From positions 255,335 through 319,334 of IMG/VR virus record IMGVR_UViG_3300024239_000013: 64,000 nucleotides of DNA, one strand, 5' to 3'. Positions within the stretch are counted from its first letter, which is position 1. Every line of letters starts with the position of its first letter. Of this stretch, positions 34,441 to 51,433 are shown in pieces. Under the pieces are notes generated by a model that saw nothing but the letters and a program-made list of their open reading frames with translations, was not told the origin of the DNA and did not search any database. A program made the translations under genes and the position numbers.

Positions 34441-36108
34441 TTATAGTGTCACTTCCGGAGTTTCTTCATCTGTTCCCCCTTCTGCTGGTGTTGTTCCCTC
34501 GGTCGGTGAAACTTCTTCACCAGTAGCGGATTCTGCTCCAGCTTCTCCTGATTCTGCTTCATTTTTTTTAGCAGCTTTAGCTTCCTTTTCTTTATAGATT
34601 TTATTCATTTTTATTTCGTCTGGATTCATTCCAAGAAATCTCTGGATTAAGAAATCATTATCGAAATAAGATTTTTCCTCTTCTCCGACTTTAACTTTAA
34701 GTTCAGCTAATCCCTTAATAAATTCACTTCTTTTTGTAAATGACGTCATCTGTACAGATTCCTCAAATTCATTATCTCTATAAAAATTTAAACCAAGATT
34801 TGATTTAAAGCTTTTATCTTTAGATAATTCAGGATGATCTAAGCACATCTGAATATAAAGAGGTTTTACTAGGATCTCCTGGAATATCGATCTAAGTCTT
34901 CTAAGGAATTTTTCAAATCTTATTTCGTCTCTTTCTAGCTGATCTATAGCTATTTGATAATTGGCAGGTGTTCCATTTTTAGAGGCAAATCTAGCATAAG
35001 GTATTTTAGAATCCATTTTAAGTTTATTGAAGAAAAATAAAACACTCTCCATCACATTAAAATCTGGTCCAGATGGGTTTAACGATTCTATCTGTGGGGA
35101 CTGCCCATCTTTCTCGGGAAACAGATAATTCTTATAGAACTGAACTTTAGGTCTACCGTTAATCGTCAATTCTCCAGAAGCATCATTGATAGAAATATCC
35201 TCTTTATAGTTAGACATCAGTTGTCCCAATGTTTGCATAGCTTTTTGTGAAGATTGACTTCCTATAGGTATAATAAATTTAAGTCTATATGAAGCATTCA
35301 TAACATTCCATATAACTCTGGAGTTTTCCATTATTCTTAGAATATTATAAGATCTCACCAATCTTTCTACGTAACTTACTCTTGAAATACTATTTCCCTT
35401 TGCATAAGAAATATAGATAACCTGTTCGTTAGTGAGTTTTCGGGTCATCTGTGGATTTTTTGGATATTGTAGCCAAAATTGAACATATTCGCTTTCTCCA
35501 ACCTTTTCAACTACAGGTTGCAAAGAAGCAGGATCTAATTCTTTAAATCCTATAATCTCTTTCCCCTTGTTATCATAAATTATTTCAAAAGCTAAAAACC
35601 CATCTATGAGAAACTGTCTAAAATACTGCCACCCCAAAACACTATTCTGAAATCCAAAAACATTATATATTCTATTATAATGTTTGAACATTTTTTCCTT
35701 CATTTTTTCCTTCAGATCCATGTTGATAAATGAGGGTTGTGCAAAATAATTTCTATCGTCGTAATTTATTGCCTCGTCACTAATAGTATCCAATATAAAT
35801 TCTATCTCACCATTCAAAGAAAACTTTCTGAGATAATTTCTCTTATCGTTATAGTCTCTATCGAAATATGCAATATATTTTCTTACCTTTGTATCCTGGT
35901 AAGAAGCTGTCCAATAAAAAGCATCATTTTGGGTAAATCCTGTTCCCTCTTGACTGGAGAAGAATCCCTCAGTTTTCCCAATGGCCTGTGAATTTCTCAC
36001 AACCATATCGTCATACTGCATACCAAATTTTGATATATTCCCTAGATTTTTTAATATATTACCTAGTGCGGATTGGTTTGGTTTTAAATAATCTAAAAAT
36101 CCTGCCAT
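34441..36108 (-). CDS. gp20: Portal protein paralog B (gp20-like)
   Basis: FRQFLIDGFLAFEI, SYVERLVRSYN.LRIME.SRVIW, DEIRFEKFLRRLRSIF. Confidence 0.85.
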   Translation of the reverse strand: MAGFLDYLKPNQSALGNILKNLGNISKFGMQYDDMVVRNSQAIGKTEGFFSSQEGTGFTQNDAFYWTASYQDTKVRKYIAYFDRDYNDKRNYLRKFSLNGEIEFILDTISDEAINYDDRNYFAQPSFINMDLKEKMKEKMFKHYNRIYNVFGFQNSVLGWQYFRQFLIDGFLAFEIIYDNKGKEIIGFKELDPASLQPVVEKVGESEYVQFWLQYPKNPQMTRKLTNEQVIYISYAKGNSISRVSYVERLVRSYNILRIMENSRVIWNVMNASYRLKFIIPIGSQSSQKAMQTLGQLMSNYKEDISINDASGELTINGRPKVQFYKNYLFPEKDGQSPQIESLNPSGPDFNVMESVLFFFNKLKMDSKIPYARFASKNGTPANYQIAIDQLERDEIRFEKFLRRLRSIFQEILVKPLYIQMCLDHPELSKDKSFKSNLGLNFYRDNEFEESVQMTSFTKRSEFIKGLAELKVKVGEEEKSYFDNDFLIQRFLGMNPDEIKMNKIYKEKEAKAAKKNEAESGEAGAESATGEEVSPTEGTTPAEGGTDEETPEVTL

Positions 36109-36112
36109 TTTA

Positions 36113-37702
36113 TTATAATGTTACTTCCGGGGTTTCTTCACCTTCACCCTTATTTTCGGCTTTCTTTTTTTCCCTTTCCTTTCTTTCTAAAGCTTCTTTA
36201 TTTGCAACTATATCTTGTTTAGAAATACCTAAGTAGTTTTCTATAAGAAAAGCATTAGAAAAATACGGTTCTTCATTATCTCCTAAAATTCCACTCATGG
36301 ATAGAATTGCTTCTTTCTTCTTTTCTATTGTTGCTATTTCCTGATTTATTTTAAATGGATTATCAGAGAAATAATCTAAACCTAATTGGCTTTTAAATAA
36401 GAAATCATCTTCAAGATTAGGATATTTCTTAACCATTTGTATCCAAAGTGGTTTTATTAGAATCTCCTGGAAAGTAGATCTTAGTCTAGATATGAATTTT
36501 GAAAATCTTATTTCTTCCTTATCCAGTCCCTCTGCACCATTTGAATAAGGAGACGTACTTCCTCCATCTGGATTATGAAACCTAGAAGGAGGTACTTTAG
36601 ATTCTAATATAAACTTATCGAAAAAATAACTCAAAGGTTGAGGATCGTTTAAATTAGGACCCTCCGTATTTATAGGTTCTATAGTAGGTGTACCATTTAC
36701 ACCAGAAGGCATCAGATAGTTTTTGTAGAATTGTATCTTTGGTCTACCGTCTATTGTCAATTCACCACTTTCATCATTAAGTTCTATATCCTCCTTATAA
36801 ATGCTCATTAGTTCGCCTAGAGTTTGCATTCCTTTTTGCTGGGATTTAGATCCTATCGGAACTGTCATTTTCAGCTTAAATGAAGCGTTCATAACGGACC
36901 AAATAACTCTAGTATATTCCATGATTCGTAGAATATTATAGGGTCTTATAAGTCTCTCTATATAGCTTATTCTTGATATAGCATTACCCTTCGCATAAGA
37001 AATATAAATTATCTGTGGATCATATAAAACTCTTTTTCTTTTAGGATCTTGTGGATATTGTGTCCATGTATTTATAAAAGTCCCATCTATTTGTTTTTCT
37101 ACACTAGGAACTAGGGTTACCGCATCTAATTCTTTAAATCCTATTATATTTTCTCCTCTATCATCATAGATTATCTCAAATGCTAAGAAACCATCTATTA
37201 TAAATTGTCTGAAATATTGCCAGGCTGTTATATCGTCCGAAAATCCCCAGATGTCATATAATTTTTTATATGATTCATAAAGTTCATCCTTTAATTTTTC
37301 ATTTATATCAGTAATATCAATAAAGTCGGGATAAGCAAAGAAATTTGAAGGATCATAGGATATCGACTCGTCACATATAGTATCTAGGACCCATTCAATC
37401 TCAGGATTAAGTGAGAATTTTCTTAAGAAATCTCTTTTCCCTTTATAGTCCTTATCGAAATATCCGATAAACTGTTTAGTAGTTATATCCTGCTTTGCTA
37501 AAGTCCATAACATACTTTCGTCCTCCACGTTGGACTTATTCTTGTTTAAGAAGTTTGCTTCGGTTACACCTACAGCCTGTGAATTTCTGATGACCATGTC
37601 ATCATACTTCATACCAAAGGTACTTATCTTCCTAACAGAGTCTCGGATTCTCTGTATAACAGGAGTCTGTGATGGATTATTATTATCTACAAAGCCAGCC
37701 AT
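36113..37702 (-). CDS. gp20: Portal protein paralog A (gp20-like)
   Basis: FRQFIIDGFLAFEI, SYIERLIRPYN.LRIME, EEIRFSKFISRLRSTF. Confidence 0.85.
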   Translation of the reverse strand: MAGFVDNNNPSQTPVIQRIRDSVRKISTFGMKYDDMVIRNSQAVGVTEANFLNKNKSNVEDESMLWTLAKQDITTKQFIGYFDKDYKGKRDFLRKFSLNPEIEWVLDTICDESISYDPSNFFAYPDFIDITDINEKLKDELYESYKKLYDIWGFSDDITAWQYFRQFIIDGFLAFEIIYDDRGENIIGFKELDAVTLVPSVEKQIDGTFINTWTQYPQDPKRKRVLYDPQIIYISYAKGNAISRISYIERLIRPYNILRIMEYTRVIWSVMNASFKLKMTVPIGSKSQQKGMQTLGELMSIYKEDIELNDESGELTIDGRPKIQFYKNYLMPSGVNGTPTIEPINTEGPNLNDPQPLSYFFDKFILESKVPPSRFHNPDGGSTSPYSNGAEGLDKEEIRFSKFISRLRSTFQEILIKPLWIQMVKKYPNLEDDFLFKSQLGLDYFSDNPFKINQEIATIEKKKEAILSMSGILGDNEEPYFSNAFLIENYLGISKQDIVANKEALERKEREKKKAENKGEGEETPEVTL

Positions 37703-38829: not shown

Positions 38830-39189
38830 TTAAATATTATATGAATTATCATCACCAGTGATATAGCTAAATGGTATAGTTTTAGGATTTTTAGGGGGAT
38901 GTAATTTTTTCCATCCCTTAGCAAATCCATTTTTAGCAATCTGTGTAAAATAAGCAAATGGATTATTAGACTTTTCAGGATTGAATCGATTCCAATATTT
39001 ACAGAGATCTTCCATAGCAAAGGCCATACAATCTTCTTTATCTTCTGGATCTTTATATGACATTTTCTTAGCTATACCGTTTATCATTAAGGTAAACATT
39101 TCTATAGTTTCCGGTGTCAGCTTACCGGCTTTCTTTGATTCTATTACAGCAAGCATAAGCTCACTATTTTTAACATATTCTTTTGCCAT
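38830..39189 (-). CDS. gp55: Late-transcription sigma factor (gp55-like); start reassigned to ATG 39189 (MAKEYV)
   Basis: YVKNSEL, KYWNRFNPEKSNNPFAYFTQI. Confidence 0.85.
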   Translation of the reverse strand: MAKEYVKNSELMLAVIESKKAGKLTPETIEMFTLMINGIAKKMSYKDPEDKEDCMAFAMEDLCKYWNRFNPEKSNNPFAYFTQIAKNGFAKGWKKLHPPKNPKTIPFSYITGDDNSYNI

Positions 39190-39216
39190 TAATTGTTTAA
39201 TTAGTTTGGATTTATA

Positions 39217-39244
39217 TTCTAGTATAAAAAATGGTAAATATTTC
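39217..39244 (-). promoter_or_regulatory. ECF-type promoter GAAAT-N17-CTAGAA upstream of gp55
   Basis: Same spacing and -10 as the other copies. Confidence 0.6.
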
Positions 39245-39246
39245 AT

Positions 39247-39283
39247 AAAAAAAGAATGTAGCTTTTTGGTTACATTCTTTTTT
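39247..39283 (-). terminator. Intrinsic terminator
   Basis: aaaaaagaatgta-N10-tacattctttttt 13-bp stem. Confidence 0.75.
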
Positions 39284-39441
39284 ATTTTTATTCCTTTCTT
39301 CTCCGGTTTCGTCTGCATCCGAATCGTCTTTTATTTCTTTTCCATCTGGTGCCTTACTTAATTTTCCTTCCGAAGATTGAACGAAGGGTTCACCCGGTTT
39401 ATTTTGATCTTCCGATTTTGGAGCAAAATAAAAGTTACGAC

Positions 39442-41829
39442 TTAGTTTTTTTTTAAAGTTTCAGATTCGGTTAAATTCCCATCATTTTCAACTTTACCCT
39501 CTCTAAGATTATATCCAATTTCATATTTTTCCCCATCTGCATCTTCTGCATCAAAATTAGTTTTATCTTTGGTTTTAGGTGAATCAGCTAAAAGTTTTTC
39601 TCCTTCCACTTTACCCTTTTCTTTTTTATTGTTTCCTGGGGCTTTTGCAAGATCGTCATTACCATCTTTCTTCTTAGCTTCGTTCATAGTAATATTATAC
39701 CCATGAAGAGAATCTAATTCCATTTCTATGGAATCTTGTTCTCCCTTAGGAGCTTTAGAAAAACTGTGGCTATCTGCAAAATTCTTTAAAAGAGTTTTTT
39801 GCTCTTCTATGCTTAGGTCTGATTTATTAAGATTATTTGACTCTTTAACTTCTTCTGCTTCCTCCTCCTCTTTAGCATCTTTTTCATTTTTATCTGCAGC
39901 TTGACTTAAAGCTTCTTCCAAATCAGAAATTTCATTAACTAGGAAATCTTCGGTTTTTCCGTTGTCTAAAAGTATAGTATATCTTCCAGATGTCCCATCT
40001 ACTGAAATTATCTTACCGGTTTCTCCTGATTCTTTAACTTTTATAAAATCTCCAATATTGAATTTTTCATCTTCTGATATATTAATTTTGTCAGCAAATG
40101 AAATTTCTTCTTCTATTTTAGATATTTCAGTGTTTATTTGGTTCCATTTTTCTCTTAGAACATTTAGTTCGTTTTCTAATGCAGATTTAGCAGTTAGAAT
40201 TTCATTAGAGCTTTTATATAAAGGTGAAGATTCTAATAAAGAATTTATTTTATTAATCTCATTCTCAACTTTAGAAATATTTTCTAAAACTTTATTTCTA
40301 TCATTTACCATGATAGATTTTAGTTTATTTTCGCCTTCCAAGAACTCAGTTAACCCTTCCGAAATATCATATTTTAAATAAGACTTAACCATAGAAACTG
40401 CTTGAGTTCCACTAACTTTGAAAATTGAATTTTCATTCATAGTTTGGTTAATCTTTTGTAAATAGATCTGATTATTCCACTTGAACATATTTACACCAAC
40501 TCCTTCATAGATATTAGAATTTATACTTTTTGCAAAATCTAACTCAACTATATCTGAATAGTTATTGTATAAGAACATTGTATCATTAACAACTTCTGAT
40601 TCATTTACTCCAAAATAAGAGCTAGACTCTAATCCTAATATTTTAGCAAGTCCAATATTATCTGAAAATCTTAATTTATCTTTTCCTAAATAAACTGCTA
40701 CATTTTCTCCCTCTTCTACTAGTTTAACTATTTTTTTACCAAATCTAATGGAAATACCATTCTCATTAATAGTAACATGTGGTTTTTTAGTAATCTCCAC
40801 TAATTTAAGATAATCTGAAGGTAATTCAGAAACCTGTTTTTCTGTTAATTTAACTAATTCTTTTTCTGATGCTTCGAATACAGAATTTCCTATATGGAAG
40901 AAAGTTCTTCCATTTTCAAATAAAATAGGCGAGTAAACTCTAGAAACGCTAGATTCACCCTGAGCTTTTATTGGAATTTCCAAGAATCTATTATCCTCTT
41001 TCTCGTTTATATTTAGAAAATTTATTAAATTTCTAACAACTGGATTGAAACTATATTTAGAAATATCTCTAACTAATAAACCATTTGACTTTTCTTCTGA
41101 AACCAACCAAGAATTTAAAGTTTCAGAAAGTTCAGAATAGAATGCATAGCTTCCACTATTTTTGATAGATTCTAAAACTTTAGAAACCTCAATTTCTCTA
41201 GAATATTTTTTAGCTTTATTCTTTAACTCTTCTGCTATACCTCTAACTGAATTTTCCCAATTAAAAGATTCTAATTCAGCAATAAAATTATTCACTACAA
41301 CAAACTCAGGAAGATTCTTATTTAAAATAAGATTCTGATATTGTTCAAAAAGTACTTTTGCTTTAGGATACTCACAGATAGAAGATTCTTTCAACTTGGA
41401 AATTGCCTCCATAACTCCCAAGTTTTTAATTCCTTGAGATTCAATAAATGAAATAGCAGATCCGTCTTTATCTTCTAAACTAGATATACTCTCTAATAGT
41501 TTTTCAGATTTGGCATCGTCCATTTCATTACCAGGAAGATATGATCCTGAATTTGATGATGTGTTTTTACCTAATCCTGACCAAGATTCCATAAGTGCTT
41601 CTGCTGCTCTTTTAGATACCTCAGCTTCTTCCTTTCTTATTGCTTCAATGTGATTGACAATACTAGGAGATTCGTTTTGTGTCATTTCTGAATTATTATG
41701 TTCGTTGATAGAAGCTATTAATTGATCTTTAGAAACGGATTCGCCTCTAAGAAAACTCTCACATAGTGATTTTACCTCTGGAGATTTTGTTACCTCTTTT
41801 AATTTTTTTACTTGGTTTATAAAGTCCAT
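39442..41829 (-). CDS. Large probable head/core protein with KOW-like domain and xKAP repeats
   Basis: 795 aa; FNIGDFIKVKESGETGKII; many (L/I)xE sites; late promoter upstream. Confidence 0.6.
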   Translation of the reverse strand: MDFINQVKKLKEVTKSPEVKSLCESFLRGESVSKDQLIASINEHNNSEMTQNESPSIVNHIEAIRKEEAEVSKRAAEALMESWSGLGKNTSSNSGSYLPGNEMDDAKSEKLLESISSLEDKDGSAISFIESQGIKNLGVMEAISKLKESSICEYPKAKVLFEQYQNLILNKNLPEFVVVNNFIAELESFNWENSVRGIAEELKNKAKKYSREIEVSKVLESIKNSGSYAFYSELSETLNSWLVSEEKSNGLLVRDISKYSFNPVVRNLINFLNINEKEDNRFLEIPIKAQGESSVSRVYSPILFENGRTFFHIGNSVFEASEKELVKLTEKQVSELPSDYLKLVEITKKPHVTINENGISIRFGKKIVKLVEEGENVAVYLGKDKLRFSDNIGLAKILGLESSSYFGVNESEVVNDTMFLYNNYSDIVELDFAKSINSNIYEGVGVNMFKWNNQIYLQKINQTMNENSIFKVSGTQAVSMVKSYLKYDISEGLTEFLEGENKLKSIMVNDRNKVLENISKVENEINKINSLLESSPLYKSSNEILTAKSALENELNVLREKWNQINTEISKIEEEISFADKINISEDEKFNIGDFIKVKESGETGKIISVDGTSGRYTILLDNGKTEDFLVNEISDLEEALSQAADKNEKDAKEEEEAEEVKESNNLNKSDLSIEEQKTLLKNFADSHSFSKAPKGEQDSIEMELDSLHGYNITMNEAKKKDGNDDLAKAPGNNKKEKGKVEGEKLLADSPKTKDKTNFDAEDADGEKYEIGYNLREGKVENDGNLTESETLKKN

Positions 41830-41851
41830 TTTTTACTTTTTTTTTACTGTT

Positions 41852-50285: not shown

Positions 50286-50861
50286 TTACAAGAAAAGGTC
50301 TTCCCAATAATCACAAACCCAACTAGTTGTTATTGTATAGATAGTTGCTTGTTCATAGTCTAGTTCCATGGGATTTATAGCTTCACTCAAGAAACATGAG
50401 GGTATTCTTATTCTCCTAAAAACATCCCCTCTTTTATTAAAGATTGATATTGAGATAGATCCTACATAGTCTGCTTTTATCCCCATTGCACCTGTAAGAG
50501 GATTATAAATTAAATCTGACCATTGTCTAAGTATTTTATAAACGCTCATCGAATTAGCATCATTTAAGTTAACCTCAAATTCCATGGTCAATGTCATATC
50601 ACTTTGAGAAGGTTCTCCCCCTGCATATCTTCTTGTTGCAAACTTATAGTTTTGGTTAATAGTCTGTGCAGGAGCAATATCAACAGCTAACCCTGTTATA
50701 GATTTAACTTGTTGTGCTAATATTCCCTCCCCATTAAATGCCGTTGTTGCATCTAAAATACCAGCAGGAGGATTTATAATAACTTCAAACTGGTTCAAAA
50801 ATACCGGTTCATAGTTATTTATTGCTGCTTTAGAATTCGTAAAATGTGGTAATCCTGCCAT
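50286..50861 (-). CDS. Tail tube protein paralog 2 (gp19-like)
   Basis: MAGLPHF, LRQWSDLIYNPLTG, W.CDYWEDLFL. Confidence 0.85.
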   Translation of the reverse strand: MAGLPHFTNSKAAINNYEPVFLNQFEVIINPPAGILDATTAFNGEGILAQQVKSITGLAVDIAPAQTINQNYKFATRRYAGGEPSQSDMTLTMEFEVNLNDANSMSVYKILRQWSDLIYNPLTGAMGIKADYVGSISISIFNKRGDVFRRIRIPSCFLSEAINPMELDYEQATIYTITTSWVCDYWEDLFL

Positions 50862-50878
50862 TTATTATTTTTAATTTT

Positions 50879-51433
50879 TTATAGGAATAAATCTTCCCAA
50901 TAATCAACCGCCCAAGTCATATCGTCAATTTTATATAAATCGGTAGAGGTATAATTTAAATTCATAGGAGATATTGGTTTAGTAGGAAAGCAATCCTTAC
51001 ATGTTATTCTTCTAAAAACGTCTCCTTGTTTATTAAAAATCGATATAACTATAGTTCCCGTATAGTCGCTTTTAATGCCCATTGCACCAGTCAATGGATT
51101 ATAAATCAAATCTGACCATTGTCTTAATGTTTTGAAAACATACATAGAGTTAGCATCATTAAGGTTTACAGTAAAACTTAAACTAACGTCCATAAATGTA
51201 TTTTCGGGTTTAGCTCCAGCATAATTTCTTTTAGCAAATTTATACTTTTGGCTAGTTACTCCGGGATTCTTATCTAAAGAAAGTCCGCTAACCTTAGTAA
51301 CATGTTGGAGTAATATTTCACCACCAGCTACAGCAGCAGGAGGTATTATTGTTACCTCGAACTGGTTCAGATAAACAGGTTCAAATTTGTTTATAGCTGA
51401 AAGTGAATTTTGAAAATGTGATAGTCCTGCCAT
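50879..51433 (-). CDS. Tail tube protein paralog 1 (gp19-like)
   Basis: MAGLSHF, LRQWSDLIYNPLTG, WAVDYWEDLFL. Confidence 0.85.
   Translation of the reverse strand: MAGLSHFQNSLSAINKFEPVYLNQFEVTIIPPAAVAGGEILLQHVTKVSGLSLDKNPGVTSQKYKFAKRNYAGAKPENTFMDVSLSFTVNLNDANSMYVFKTLRQWSDLIYNPLTGAMGIKSDYTGTIVISIFNKQGDVFRRITCKDCFPTKPISPMNLNYTSTDLYKIDDMTWAVDYWEDLFL

What the first reader, a model, noticed from the sequence alone, without database searches (positions are those of the whole stretch)
39212..39460. Hidden -1 frameshift (or A9 slippage) extension of the 795-aa head protein
Seen: the ORF ends TTA AAA AAA AAC TAA, i.e. a canonical A-AAA-AAC slippery heptamer (39445-39451) within a 9-A run, right before the stop. 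The -1 frame stays open for 77 codons with no ATG and encodes FYFAPK...GKLSKAPDGKEIKDDSDADE, continuing the FSKAP/LAKAP/LADSP repeats of the upstream C-terminus. This explains a 250-bp gap that is less AT-rich than other intergenic DNA. Known: phage capsid and tail genes use such shifts to make short and long forms at a fixed ratio. Caveats: a homopolymer sequencing error gives the same picture; no clear stimulatory hairpin; the frame runs through the 39247 terminator before its stop.
Basis: partly seen in the sequence, partly recalled or inferred. Interest (0 to 1): 0.8.

Follow-up and report, generated by a model that had tools for sequence, protein, structure and literature searches.

The report
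Conserved A9 frameshift site extending a phage protein
A run of nine A's at the end of an 795-residue gene of a 319-kb T4-like jumbo phage is a conserved recoding site that lets some molecules continue into a hidden ~50-residue tail, so the gene makes a short and a long protein that gene callers miss.

Summary
The minus-strand ORF 39442-41829 ends TTA AAA AAA AAC TAA. The -1 frame then stays open for 77 codons.

In 62 distinct relatives from independent metagenomes (54-79% protein identity):
- the run is always 9 or 10 A's;
- the 0-frame C-terminus is KK[N/K]-stop;
- the -1 frame encodes a conserved peptide, LSRNFYFAPK..NQNKPG..FV.SS.GKLSKAP.GK plus an acidic tail.

This peptide shows clear codon periodicity, with pN/pS 0.25 against 1.5-1.8 in the other frames. 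No start codon can reach it. An intrinsic terminator follows the stop of the extension, not the 0-frame stop. One derived clade encodes the same peptide in frame with the main ORF, or as a separate small ORF.

Sequencing error, a dead relic and an independent gene are therefore excluded.

The mechanism is not settled. I favour RNA-polymerase slippage (A9 to A10 in the mRNA) for three reasons. The run length of at least 9 is conserved beyond what a heptamer needs. No stimulatory RNA structure is conserved. A metatranscriptome contig carries A10, while no DNA contig of this type does. Ribosomal -1 slippage on A_AAA_AAC remains a serious rival.

The protein's function is unknown, and the "head protein" label is unsupported. 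This is a new member of a known kind.

The parts
39442..41829 (-). Main ORF, 795 aa (short isoform), function unknown. The AF2 model shows a helical N-domain (1-276), a beta-rich domain (293-472), a coiled-coil hairpin (492-573), an SH3/Tudor-like domain (595-630) and a disordered C-terminal region (652-795) with [FL][SA][KD][AS]P motifs.
39446..39454 (-). A9 homopolymer, the proposed slip site. Its first A is the third base of the Leu codon TTA; then come AAA AAA and the AA of AAC.
   Evidence: The run is 9 or 10 A's in all 62 distinct relatives. The codon before it varies (TTA, GTA, CTA, TCA, GGA, GAA) but always ends in A.
39445..39451 (-). X_XXY_YYZ heptamer A_AAA_AAC in the 0 frame, the candidate ribosomal -1 slip site.
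   Evidence: Relatives have A_AAA_AAC, A_AAA_AAG, A_AAA_AAT or A_AAA_AAA.
39442..39444 (-). 0-frame stop TAA, the end of the short isoform (...ESETLKKN).
   Evidence: In 110 of the 120 listed homologs the C-terminus is KKN or KKK followed by the stop.
39290..39445 (-). Conserved part of the -1-frame extension (52 codons): LSRNFYFAPK..NQNKPG..FVQSS.GKLSKAPDGK plus an acidic tail.
   Evidence: Entropy by codon position is 0.48/0.30/1.18. pN/pS is 0.25 in this frame and 1.5-1.8 in the other two.
39212..39289 (-). Strain-specific tail of the extension (..RNKNKKECNQKATFFFYEIFTIFYTRI-stop). It arises because this assembly has one base fewer behind 39294 than runs X2, X5 and X17.
39248..39283 (-). 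Intrinsic terminator (GAATGTA..TACATTC stem plus T-run) that closes the transcription unit after the extension.
   Evidence: A hairpin plus T-run lies about 30-60 nt (up to 87) after the extension's stop in 50 of 55 distinct loci.
38830..39189 (-). Downstream gene: T4-type late sigma factor gp55 (119 aa counted from the ATG at 39189).
   Evidence: Relatives have a 119-aa gp55 in the same place.

Best explanation
The A9 tract at 39446-39454 is a conserved programmed recoding site.

Most expression stops at TAA (39442-39444) and gives the 795-aa protein ending ...LKKN. A fraction enters the -1 frame on the A run. That fraction gives a long isoform with about 50 more residues (77 in this strain). 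The extra residues add two more aromatic/xxAP motifs (NFYFAPK, GKLSKAPDGK) and an acidic tail to an already disordered, motif-bearing C-terminus.

I think most of the shift is made by the host RNA polymerase, directed by the phage's T4-type late sigma. The polymerase slips on the nine template T's and adds one A (A9 to A10), and the edited mRNA is then translated normally to ...LKKK-LSRNFYF.... A ribosomal -1 slip on A_AAA_AAC, giving ...LKKN-LSRNFYF..., may contribute.

Shown: conservation of the site, coding status of the extension, no independent start, in-frame versions in relatives.
Inferred: which machine slips, the ratio of the two forms, and what the tail does. My guess is extra copies of a short binding motif.
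For: Recoding of some kind (my confidence about 0.9):
1. The 0-frame end [N]NA AAA AAA AA[C/G/T/A] TAA and a -1 ORF of 45-55 codons are present in 62 distinct sites from independent metagenomes. They also occur in a more distant 946-aa homolog with a diverged extension.
2. The extension is coding. Third-position entropy is 1.18 against 0.48 and 0.30 at positions 1 and 2. pN/pS is 0.25 against 1.5-1.8 in the other frames. Strain differences in the conserved part are synonymous in that frame.
3. Upstream of the extension its frame is open for only 4-16 codons. In 49 of 51 shift-requiring sites (49 of 60 sites in all) it holds no ATG, GTG or TTG, so the shift must occur on the A run. The P0123 and P0126 lineages do offer a possible start (ATG, TTG).
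4. P0108, P0110 and P0111 carry the same peptide fused in frame...KKNPSRNFYFAPK....
5. The terminator follows the stop of the extension in 50 of 55 loci.
6. The tree puts the shift-requiring form on both sides of the root. The in-frame and split forms fall in one derived clade.

For polymerase slippage specifically:
a. The run is at least 9 A's everywhere. Its first A is the third base of a codon whose amino acid varies (L, V, S, G, E), while gene-wide usage is only TTA 43% and GVA... GTA 29%. A heptamer needs only 7 bases.
b. Bacterial RNA polymerase slips efficiently on 9 A/T, and its hybrid is 9-10 bp (PMC5009743).
c. No conserved downstream structure (RNAalifold -0.25 kcal/mol; window fold z = +0.39) and no conserved upstream Shine-Dalgarno-like element.
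d. A metatranscriptome contig (X17, 368 nt, depth 5.3) spanning the site has A10. An RNA-derived library (X5) has a side unitig with A10. None of 45 distinct DNA sites of this type has A10.
e. The A9 run is kept even in the clade where the tail is in frame. There a slip would give a short form ending ..PQS-stop.
Against: - No read-level data. All runs were available only as assembled contigs, which drop minor variants.
- The X17 sample has no matched DNA. Its depth is 5, and reverse-transcriptase or PCR slippage on A9 could create A10.
- The A10 unitig in X5 runs into an adapter and may be PCR duplicates of one molecule.
- Every architecture also offers a perfect X_XXY_YYZ heptamer, usually with the 0-frame stop immediately 3' of it. 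That is a classic ribosomal arrangement.
- The in-frame relatives read KKN-P/L, like the ribosomal product.
- The invariant first A could partly be inheritance, because TTA and GTA differ by a single step.
- No protein evidence exists for either isoform.
Confidence: 0.55

Rival explanations
1. Ribosomal -1 programmed frameshifting. The tRNAs in the P and A sites slip back one base on A_AAA_AAC while the ribosome is about to meet TAA. The product is ...LKKN-LSRNFYF... at a low fixed rate, as for IS1 InsAB' or lambda G/GT. The mRNA is unedited.
For: - A perfect heptamer is present in every architecture (A_AAA_AAC/G/T/A), and in most lineages the 0-frame stop directly follows it.
- The frame window that allows entry is 4-16 codons and always contains the run.
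- In-frame relatives read KKN then P or L.
- From my own knowledge, lambda G/GT and IS1 work without strong stimulators.
Against: - It does not explain why the run is always at least 9, including a synonymous third base of a variable codon.
- No conserved hairpin, pseudoknot or Shine-Dalgarno-like stimulator.
- The commonest heptamer ends in AAC, which is a poor shifter in bacteria (my own knowledge).
- A10 is seen in RNA-derived contigs only.
- Ribosome sliding on poly(A) is weak at A9-A10 and robust only from A11 (PMC4363877).
Confidence: 0.33
2. The tail is made as a separate small peptide, by termination-reinitiation at the stop or from its own start, rather than as a fusion.
For: - One derived lineage has the tail as a separate ORF with its own ATG (L071, L094, L102, P0122).
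- Another lineage has a Ser-to-Met change that creates a TAATG overlap (L152, L153).
Against: - In 49 of 60 distinct sites there is no ATG, GTG or TTG in the 4-16 open codons before the tail.
- Three clusters fuse the tail in frame.
- The split form is nested inside the in-frame clade, so it is derived.
- The leaders in this genome lack a Shine-Dalgarno sequence.
Confidence: 0.05
3. DNA-level phase variation. The A run changes length during replication, so sub-populations carry A9 (short form) or A10 (long form).
For: - Homopolymers are classic contingency loci.
- Lineages differ in whether the tail is in frame.
Against: - 0 of 45 distinct DNA sites of the [C/G]TAAG type has A10.
- Independent samples X1 and X2 both give A9.
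- The frame toggles seen between lineages come from changes outside the run.
Confidence: 0.03
4. Artefact or relic: either a homopolymer sequencing error in one continuous ORF, or a decaying duplicate of the C-terminal repeat that is no longer expressed.
For: - The tail resembles the upstream xxKAP motifs.
- A9 runs are error-prone.
- This assembly does differ from three other runs by one base at 39294.
Against: - The same A9 plus stop occurs in dozens of independent assemblies, and the KK[N/K]-stop C-terminus is conserved.
- The tail shows purifying selection and codon periodicity.
- The terminator is placed after the tail.
Confidence: 0.02

Closest known systems
Thermus thermophilus dnaX (tau/gamma) by transcriptional slippage on a run of nine A/T (reviewed in PMC5009743)
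   Same: A nine-base A/T homopolymer inside a gene. Bacterial RNA polymerase adds A's. There are two isoforms with a common N-terminus, and no RNA stimulator is needed.
   Different: There the unedited mRNA gives the long form and slippage gives the short one. It is a cellular replication gene, and slippage there is demonstrated experimentally, which it is not here. The derived in-frame clade found here (P0108 type) has the dnaX-like polarity.
Shigella spa13 / mxiE and Citrobacter rodentium tssM: transcriptional slippage giving C-terminally extended or two-length products (PMC5009743, PMC4256274)
   Same: Slippage on an A/T run yields a minority product with a C-terminal extension (25-30% for spa13).
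   Different: Those are bacterial secretion-system genes, not phage genes, and they are shown by RNA sequencing and protein work.
IS1 insAB' and E. coli dnaX: ribosomal -1 frameshift on A_AAA_AAC / A_AAA_AAG
   Same: Identical heptamers. IS1 has a nearby 0-frame stop and weak or no stimulators.
   Different: dnaX needs an upstream Shine-Dalgarno-like element and a downstream hairpin, neither of which is conserved here. Neither case requires a run of 9.
Phage short/long pairs made by -1 frameshifting: lambda G/GT tail assembly chaperone; T7 capsid 10A/10B (about 50-aa C-terminal extension)
   Same: A phage late-region gene with the shift at the very end of the ORF, giving a fixed minority of a C-terminally extended form of similar size.
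   Different: Different protein families and slip sites (G_GGA_AAG, G_GUU_UUC). The gene here is not a capsid protein or a chaperone by any test. According to a paper cited in PMC10885494, T4-like phages do not use frameshifting for their chaperones.

Membership tests
Programmed transcriptional slippage sites of bacterial RNA polymerase | A homopolymeric A or T run about as long as the RNA:DNA hybrid (at least 9) inside the coding region | tested here: met
   A9 at 39446-39454. All 62 distinct relatives have A9 or A10. The length criterion is taken from PMC5009743.
Programmed transcriptional slippage sites of bacterial RNA polymerase | Run length conserved beyond what the encoded amino acids require | tested here: met
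   The first A is the third base of TTA, GTA, CTA, TCA, GGA or GAA, which encode five different amino acids. Both Lys codons are always AAA, while gene-wide usage is AAA 80%, TTA 43% and GTA 29%.
Programmed transcriptional slippage sites of bacterial RNA polymerase | mRNA population with extra base(s) that the DNA lacks | tested here: inconclusive
   The metatranscriptome contig X17 has A10, and the RNA-derived library X5 has an A10 side unitig. DNA contigs X1 and X2 and 45 distinct DNA sites have A9. These are contigs only, there is no matched DNA, and the depth is low.
Programmed transcriptional slippage sites of bacterial RNA polymerase | Protein product with the junction encoded by the edited mRNA (KKK-LSR) | not testable with these tools
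   No proteomic data are available for this uncultured phage.
Bacterial -1 programmed ribosomal frameshift sites | X_XXY_YYZ heptamer in the 0 frame at the point where the -1 ORF becomes accessible | tested here: met
   A_AAA_AAC at 39445-39451. Relatives have A_AAA_AAG/T/A. The entry window is 4-16 codons.
Bacterial -1 programmed ribosomal frameshift sites | Conserved overlapping -1 ORF under purifying selection | tested here: met
   pN/pS is 0.25 in the -1 frame and 1.5-1.8 in the other two frames. The ORF is 45-55 codons long in all relatives.
Bacterial -1 programmed ribosomal frameshift sites | Stimulatory element: a downstream hairpin or pseudoknot 5-9 nt after the site and/or an upstream Shine-Dalgarno-like sequence. 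This is usual but not universal. | tested here: not met
   The RNAalifold consensus on 22 sequences is -0.25 kcal/mol with 2 invariant pairs far downstream. The window fold has z = +0.39. The upstream 12 nt vary and are not Shine-Dalgarno-like. A directly adjacent stop codon is the only candidate pause signal.
   No Pfam, PHROG or PDB-sequence match, and no Foldseek match in PDB beyond a Tudor/SH3-like domain. BFVD matches are all uncharacterized myovirus proteins. The neighbours are gp55, gp4, gp2 and gp20, which is suggestive context only.

The most novel reading that the evidence does not exclude
The A9 tract is an isoform-ratio device that this phage family keeps whichever frame is the default. 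In most lineages polymerase slippage makes the long form a minority. In one derived clade the tail was fused in frame and the same A9 now makes the short form the minority. In another the tail was split off as its own ORF. If so, selection acts on producing both forms of a protein conserved next to the T4-type late sigma gene. The ~50-residue tail would be a portable module of short binding motifs (SRNFYFAP, SKAPxGK). A similar motif occurs as four tandem repeats in an unrelated small protein (P0124).
Probability: 0.35. Interest if true: 0.7.

Novelty: new member of a known kind. Interest (0 to 1): 0.6.

Why it matters
- Annotation. The site adds about 50 coding residues that no gene caller reports, in a protein family with more than 340 detected members. 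These occur in jumbo T4-like phages from lakes, rivers, wastewater and the subsurface.
- Mechanism. It is a clean natural case for separating polymerase from ribosome slippage, because relatives supply 'mutants': A9 or A10; heptamers ending in C, G, T or A; stop adjacent or 17 codons away; tail in frame; tail split off.
- Evolution. It shows that the default frame of a recoded gene can flip while the slip site is retained.
- Function. It points to a conserved but uncharacterised gene next to the late sigma factor gp55 whose two isoforms presumably matter for the phage.

Tried and rejected
- Read-level A9/A10 counts were not possible. Every run was served only as Logan contigs, and the single read-laying run is spent.
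- A search for small ORFs or fragments carrying the tail found nothing.
- A profile search of 1.84 billion representatives gave only 6 hits, none of them an A10 fusion of the main type.
- An in-frame search with P0108:824-877 returned only the three clusters already known.
- Function searches failed: Pfam and PHROGs, ESM Atlas, PDB sequences and Foldseek against PDB. Foldseek against BFVD gave only uncharacterized phage proteins.
- A search for a stimulatory RNA structure was negative.
- The T4 late-promoter motif TATAAATA is not enriched in the window and does not occur exactly upstream of the gene.
- The idea that the xxAP motifs are T4-type prohead-protease sites (L-x-E|A) was dropped. The window's own motifs have K or D, not E, at that position.
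- The tape-measure idea was dropped. The model is not an extended helix, and there is no family match.
- The literature searches found no description of this site.
- L151, a 988-nt scaffold with a 19-nt deletion over the run, was set aside as a single short contig.
Full report
**What is in the window**

The feature lies on the minus strand. ORF 39442-41829 encodes 795 residues and ends ACT TTA AAA AAA AAC TAA.
- The nine A's are 39446-39454.
- The heptamer A_AAA_AAC is 39445-39451.
- The stop is 39442-39444.

Reading on from 39445 in the -1 frame gives 77 sense codons with no ATG, up to TAA at 39212-39214. The peptide is LSRNFYFAPKSEDQNKPGEPFVQSSEGKLSKAPDGKEIKDDSDADETGEE.... The +1 frame closes after 2 codons. 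The first 52 codons have 39% G+C. Other short intergenic gaps of the window have 10-23% and the ORF has 29%. A hairpin followed by a T-run lies at 39248-39283.

**Where it comes from**

The window is the last 64 kb of a 319,334-bp IMG/VR virus record rated complete, with 31.5% G+C. Its genes are T4-like:
- a neck-like protein, terminase, sheath and two tube paralogs upstream;
- downstream of the 795-aa gene, the late sigma factor gp55 (38830-39189), head-completion gp4, gp2, two portal (gp20) paralogs, a pfkB kinase, a ligase and a clamp loader.

The 795-aa protein itself matches no Pfam or PHROG family. It shows only a weak SH3-like MSSS signal at residues 592-625.

An AlphaFold model (mean pLDDT 67) shows:
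- a helical domain;
- a beta-rich domain;
- a long coiled-coil hairpin;
- a small Tudor/SH3-like barrel;
- a disordered C-terminal region, residues 652-795, which carries the FSKAP, LAKAP and LADSP motifs.

Foldseek finds only uncharacterized myovirus proteins, for example from Tenacibaculum phage PTm1. In PDB it finds nothing beyond Tudor domains for the small barrel. Distant relatives exist in Lak megaphages and in another huge phage. In that phage the gene again sits directly before gp55, but the protein ends right after the SH3-like domain, with no disordered tail. The label 'head protein' is therefore not supported. The function is unknown.

**Is the stop real?**

A protein search gave 340 homologs. 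Of the 120 listed, 110 end in KKN or KKK, and 104 of these in [LV]KK[NK]. The nearest one, P0001 at 99% identity, is 844 aa long. The reason is an extra 49-residue repeat unit inside the disordered region, not a different end. It finishes with the same ...LTESETLKKN. The 0-frame stop is thus a conserved C-terminus and not a sequencing error.

**Is the extension real?**

I fetched the DNA of relatives in three ways: by protein, by a DNA pattern in viral contigs and by a DNA pattern in metagenome contigs. After removing duplicates and three chance matches, 62 distinct sites remain. In every one the A run has 9 or 10 A's and the frame of the tail is open for 45-55 codons. It encodes [LVIP]SRNFYFAPK..NQNKPG..F[VI].S..GK[LFM][SA]KAP[DTS]GK followed by an acidic stretch.

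Several results show that this stretch is coding and belongs to the upstream gene.
- Over the first 36 codons of 26 distinct sequences, the entropy at codon positions 1, 2 and 3 is 0.48, 0.30 and 1.18. pN/pS is 0.25 in that frame and 1.5 and 1.8 in the other two.
- Upstream of the tail its frame is open for only 4-16 codons (mode 6). In 49 of 60 sites it holds no ATG, GTG or TTG. The tail therefore cannot be started independently, and the frame change must happen on the A run.
- A strong hairpin plus T-run follows the tail's stop about 30-60 nt (up to 87) downstream in 50 of 55 distinct loci. The transcription unit is thus built around the long reading.
- Three protein clusters (P0108, P0110, P0111; 32 member sequences) encode the same peptide in frame with the main ORF...GKKNPSRNFYFAPK...SKAPTGK...EEEE.
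- A more distant 946-aa homolog keeps CTA AAA AAA AAT TAA and a -1 tail..WAFAPENEE..GKMSVAPDGK.. plus an acidic end. The site is therefore older than the exact motif.

**Architectures and their history**

Counts are distinct sites, with examples.

| Architecture | Sites | Note |
|---|---|---|
| A9 then C-TAAG | 39 | the window's type |
| A9 then G-TAAG | 6 | heptamer A_AAA_AAG |
| A10 then T-TAAG | 6 | GAA AAA AAA AAT TAA |
| A10 then GCT-TAAG | 2 | |
| A10 then TAAG | 1 | |
| A9 then CCCA | 1 | -1 shift still needed; the 0 frame runs on for 17 codons |
| A9 then CCCC or CCCT | 6 | tail in frame |
| A9 then TCTT | 1 | split form |

In the split form the main ORF ends earlier, at STMNNEE-stop-stop. 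The tail is then a separate small ORF beginning MSSNKILDFFSYINEENADVKKNLSRNFYF.

A maximum-likelihood tree of 44 N-terminal cores places the shift-requiring C/G-TAAG form on both sides of the midpoint root. The CCCA, in-frame and split forms all fall in one derived clade with 100/100 support, and the split form is nested within the in-frame forms. The frameshift requirement is thus ancestral. It was later abolished once by a one-base change upstream of the run. In the in-frame clade the A9 is still there, and a -1 shift or an added A would give a short form ending ..PQS-stop.

**Peculiarity of this strain**

Contigs of three other runs carry one more base behind 39294: a riverine DNA run, a wastewater RNA-derived run and a wastewater metatranscriptome. 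With that base the tail ends ...DADETGEEKE-stop after 51 codons, before the terminator, as in the relatives. The window's last 25 tail residues, and its run through the terminator, result from a one-base shorter A stretch in this strain or assembly.

**Which machine slips?**

Both candidate mechanisms fit the frames. An added A in the mRNA (A9 to A10) and a ribosomal -1 slip on A_AAA_AAC reach the same frame. They differ only in the junction residue, KKK-L against KKN-L.

Three observations favour the polymerase.
- Run length. A heptamer needs seven bases, yet the run is never shorter than nine. Its first A is the third base of a codon that changes identity among lineages (TTA, GTA, CTA, TCA, GGA, GAA) but never its last base. 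Gene-wide, TTA is only 43% of Leu codons, GTA 29% of Val codons and AAA 80% of Lys codons. Neighbouring synonymous sites are close to saturation (pS 0.68). Nine is the length at which bacterial RNA polymerase slips efficiently and about the length of its RNA:DNA hybrid. Thermus dnaX uses exactly such a run (PMC5009743).
- No stimulator. There is no conserved downstream structure (RNAalifold -0.25 kcal/mol on 22 sequences; window fold z = +0.39) and no conserved upstream Shine-Dalgarno-like element. The leaders of this genome are A-rich and lack a Shine-Dalgarno sequence.
- RNA evidence. The one true metatranscriptome contig that spans the site (X17, 368 nt, depth 5.3) has ten A's. An RNA-derived library (X5) breaks its assembly exactly at the run and has a side unitig with ten A's. 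The two DNA runs and all 45 distinct DNA sites of this type have nine.

Against this reading:
- the RNA data are contigs, at low depth and without matched DNA;
- the X5 unitig ends in an adapter and may be PCR duplicates;
- reverse transcriptase also slips on A9;
- the adjacency of the stop to a perfect heptamer is a classic ribosomal layout;
- IS1 (A_AAA_AAC) and lambda G/GT work without strong stimulators (my own knowledge).

Ribosome sliding on poly(A) is weak at A9-A10 (PMC4363877). My estimates are: recoding of some kind about 0.9; polymerase slippage as the main route about 0.55; ribosomal -1 shift about 0.33. The two routes may act together.

**What the tail may do**

This part is inference only. 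The tail lengthens a disordered, motif-bearing C-terminus by two more aromatic/xxAP motifs and an acidic end. Two findings suggest a portable binding module whose dosage is set by the slip rate:
- it can exist fused, frameshifted or as a free small ORF;
- an unrelated 122-aa protein carries four tandem SRNYYFTDGEVD repeats.

One subfamily has a peptidoglycan-binding domain inserted near the N-terminus. This hints at a protein that meets the cell wall, but nothing here tests that.

**Comparison and novelty**

The logic is that of known short/long pairs:
- Thermus dnaX, Shigella spa13 and Citrobacter tssM for polymerase slippage;
- E. coli dnaX, IS1, lambda G/GT and T7 10A/10B for ribosomal shifts.

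The gene family is uncharacterised, and I found no description of this site in the papers searched. I rate it a new member of a known kind. Added interest comes from the natural series of architectures and from the retention of the run after the default frame flipped.

Noticed in passing
window 34441-36108 and 36113-37702 (-); 50286-50861 and 50879-51433 (-): There are two tandem T4-type portal (gp20) paralogs, 48% identical over their full length, and two tandem tail-tube paralogs. A duplicated portal gene is unusual for a tailed phage.
   Followed up: partly
window 39445-39876 (-) versus P0001: A 99%-identical relative (P0001, 844 aa) has an extra 49-residue repeat unit (..EGDLAEAPDNE..NLAEAPGKEGDIDF..GYN) inside the disordered C-terminal region. 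Family members range from 723 to 988 aa, mostly through copy number of such units.
   Followed up: partly
window 39294-39295: This assembly has one base fewer in a short A stretch than three other runs (X2, X5, X17). This replaces the usual ..EEKE-stop end of the tail by 27 other residues (from ..EERN on) that run through the terminator. It is either a real strain variant or an assembly error; the source run agrees with the window.
   Followed up: yes
L152:590-770, L153: In one lineage the Ser codon after the stop is ATG (A9 G TAATG CGT AAT TTC..). This creates a stop/start overlap, so the tail might also be made as a separate 48-aa peptide there. The A9 is kept.
   Followed up: partly
L154:1737-2105 (P0124): This is a 122-aa protein on a 2.5-kb scaffold, with an AAA_14 ATPase gene on the opposite strand about 470 nt away. 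It consists largely of four tandem repeats of SRNYYFTDGEVD, which resembles the first motif of the tail (SRNFYFAP; ISTNFYFTD in L017).
   Followed up: no
L157:988-3237 (LR756500, 462-kb huge phage): A distant homolog (617 aa) sits directly upstream of a gp55 gene, as in the window, but ends after the SH3-like domain. It has no disordered tail and no A run. The pairing of this gene with gp55 is therefore older than the recoding.
   Followed up: partly
window 41830-41850 (-): The leader of the gene has no Shine-Dalgarno sequence and contains another A9 (41837-41845) just before the ATG, preceded by GGATATATAAACAG. The style is that of Bacteroidota-type translation starts. A weak structural relative is from a Tenacibaculum phage, and sequence relatives are in Prevotella (Lak) phages.
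   Followed up: no
L037 (IMGVR_UViG_3300008113_006113): The homolog is broken by an internal frame change (463 + 317 residues), far from the A run. This is an assembly error or a pseudogene.
   Followed up: no
G000:C1 about 122959 (outside the window): A 152-aa ORF ends AGA TTA AAA AAA AAT TAA, the same LKKN-stop on an A9, but its -1 frame closes after 2 codons. This shows that A9 plus a stop arises by chance in this A+T-rich genome.
   Followed up: partly
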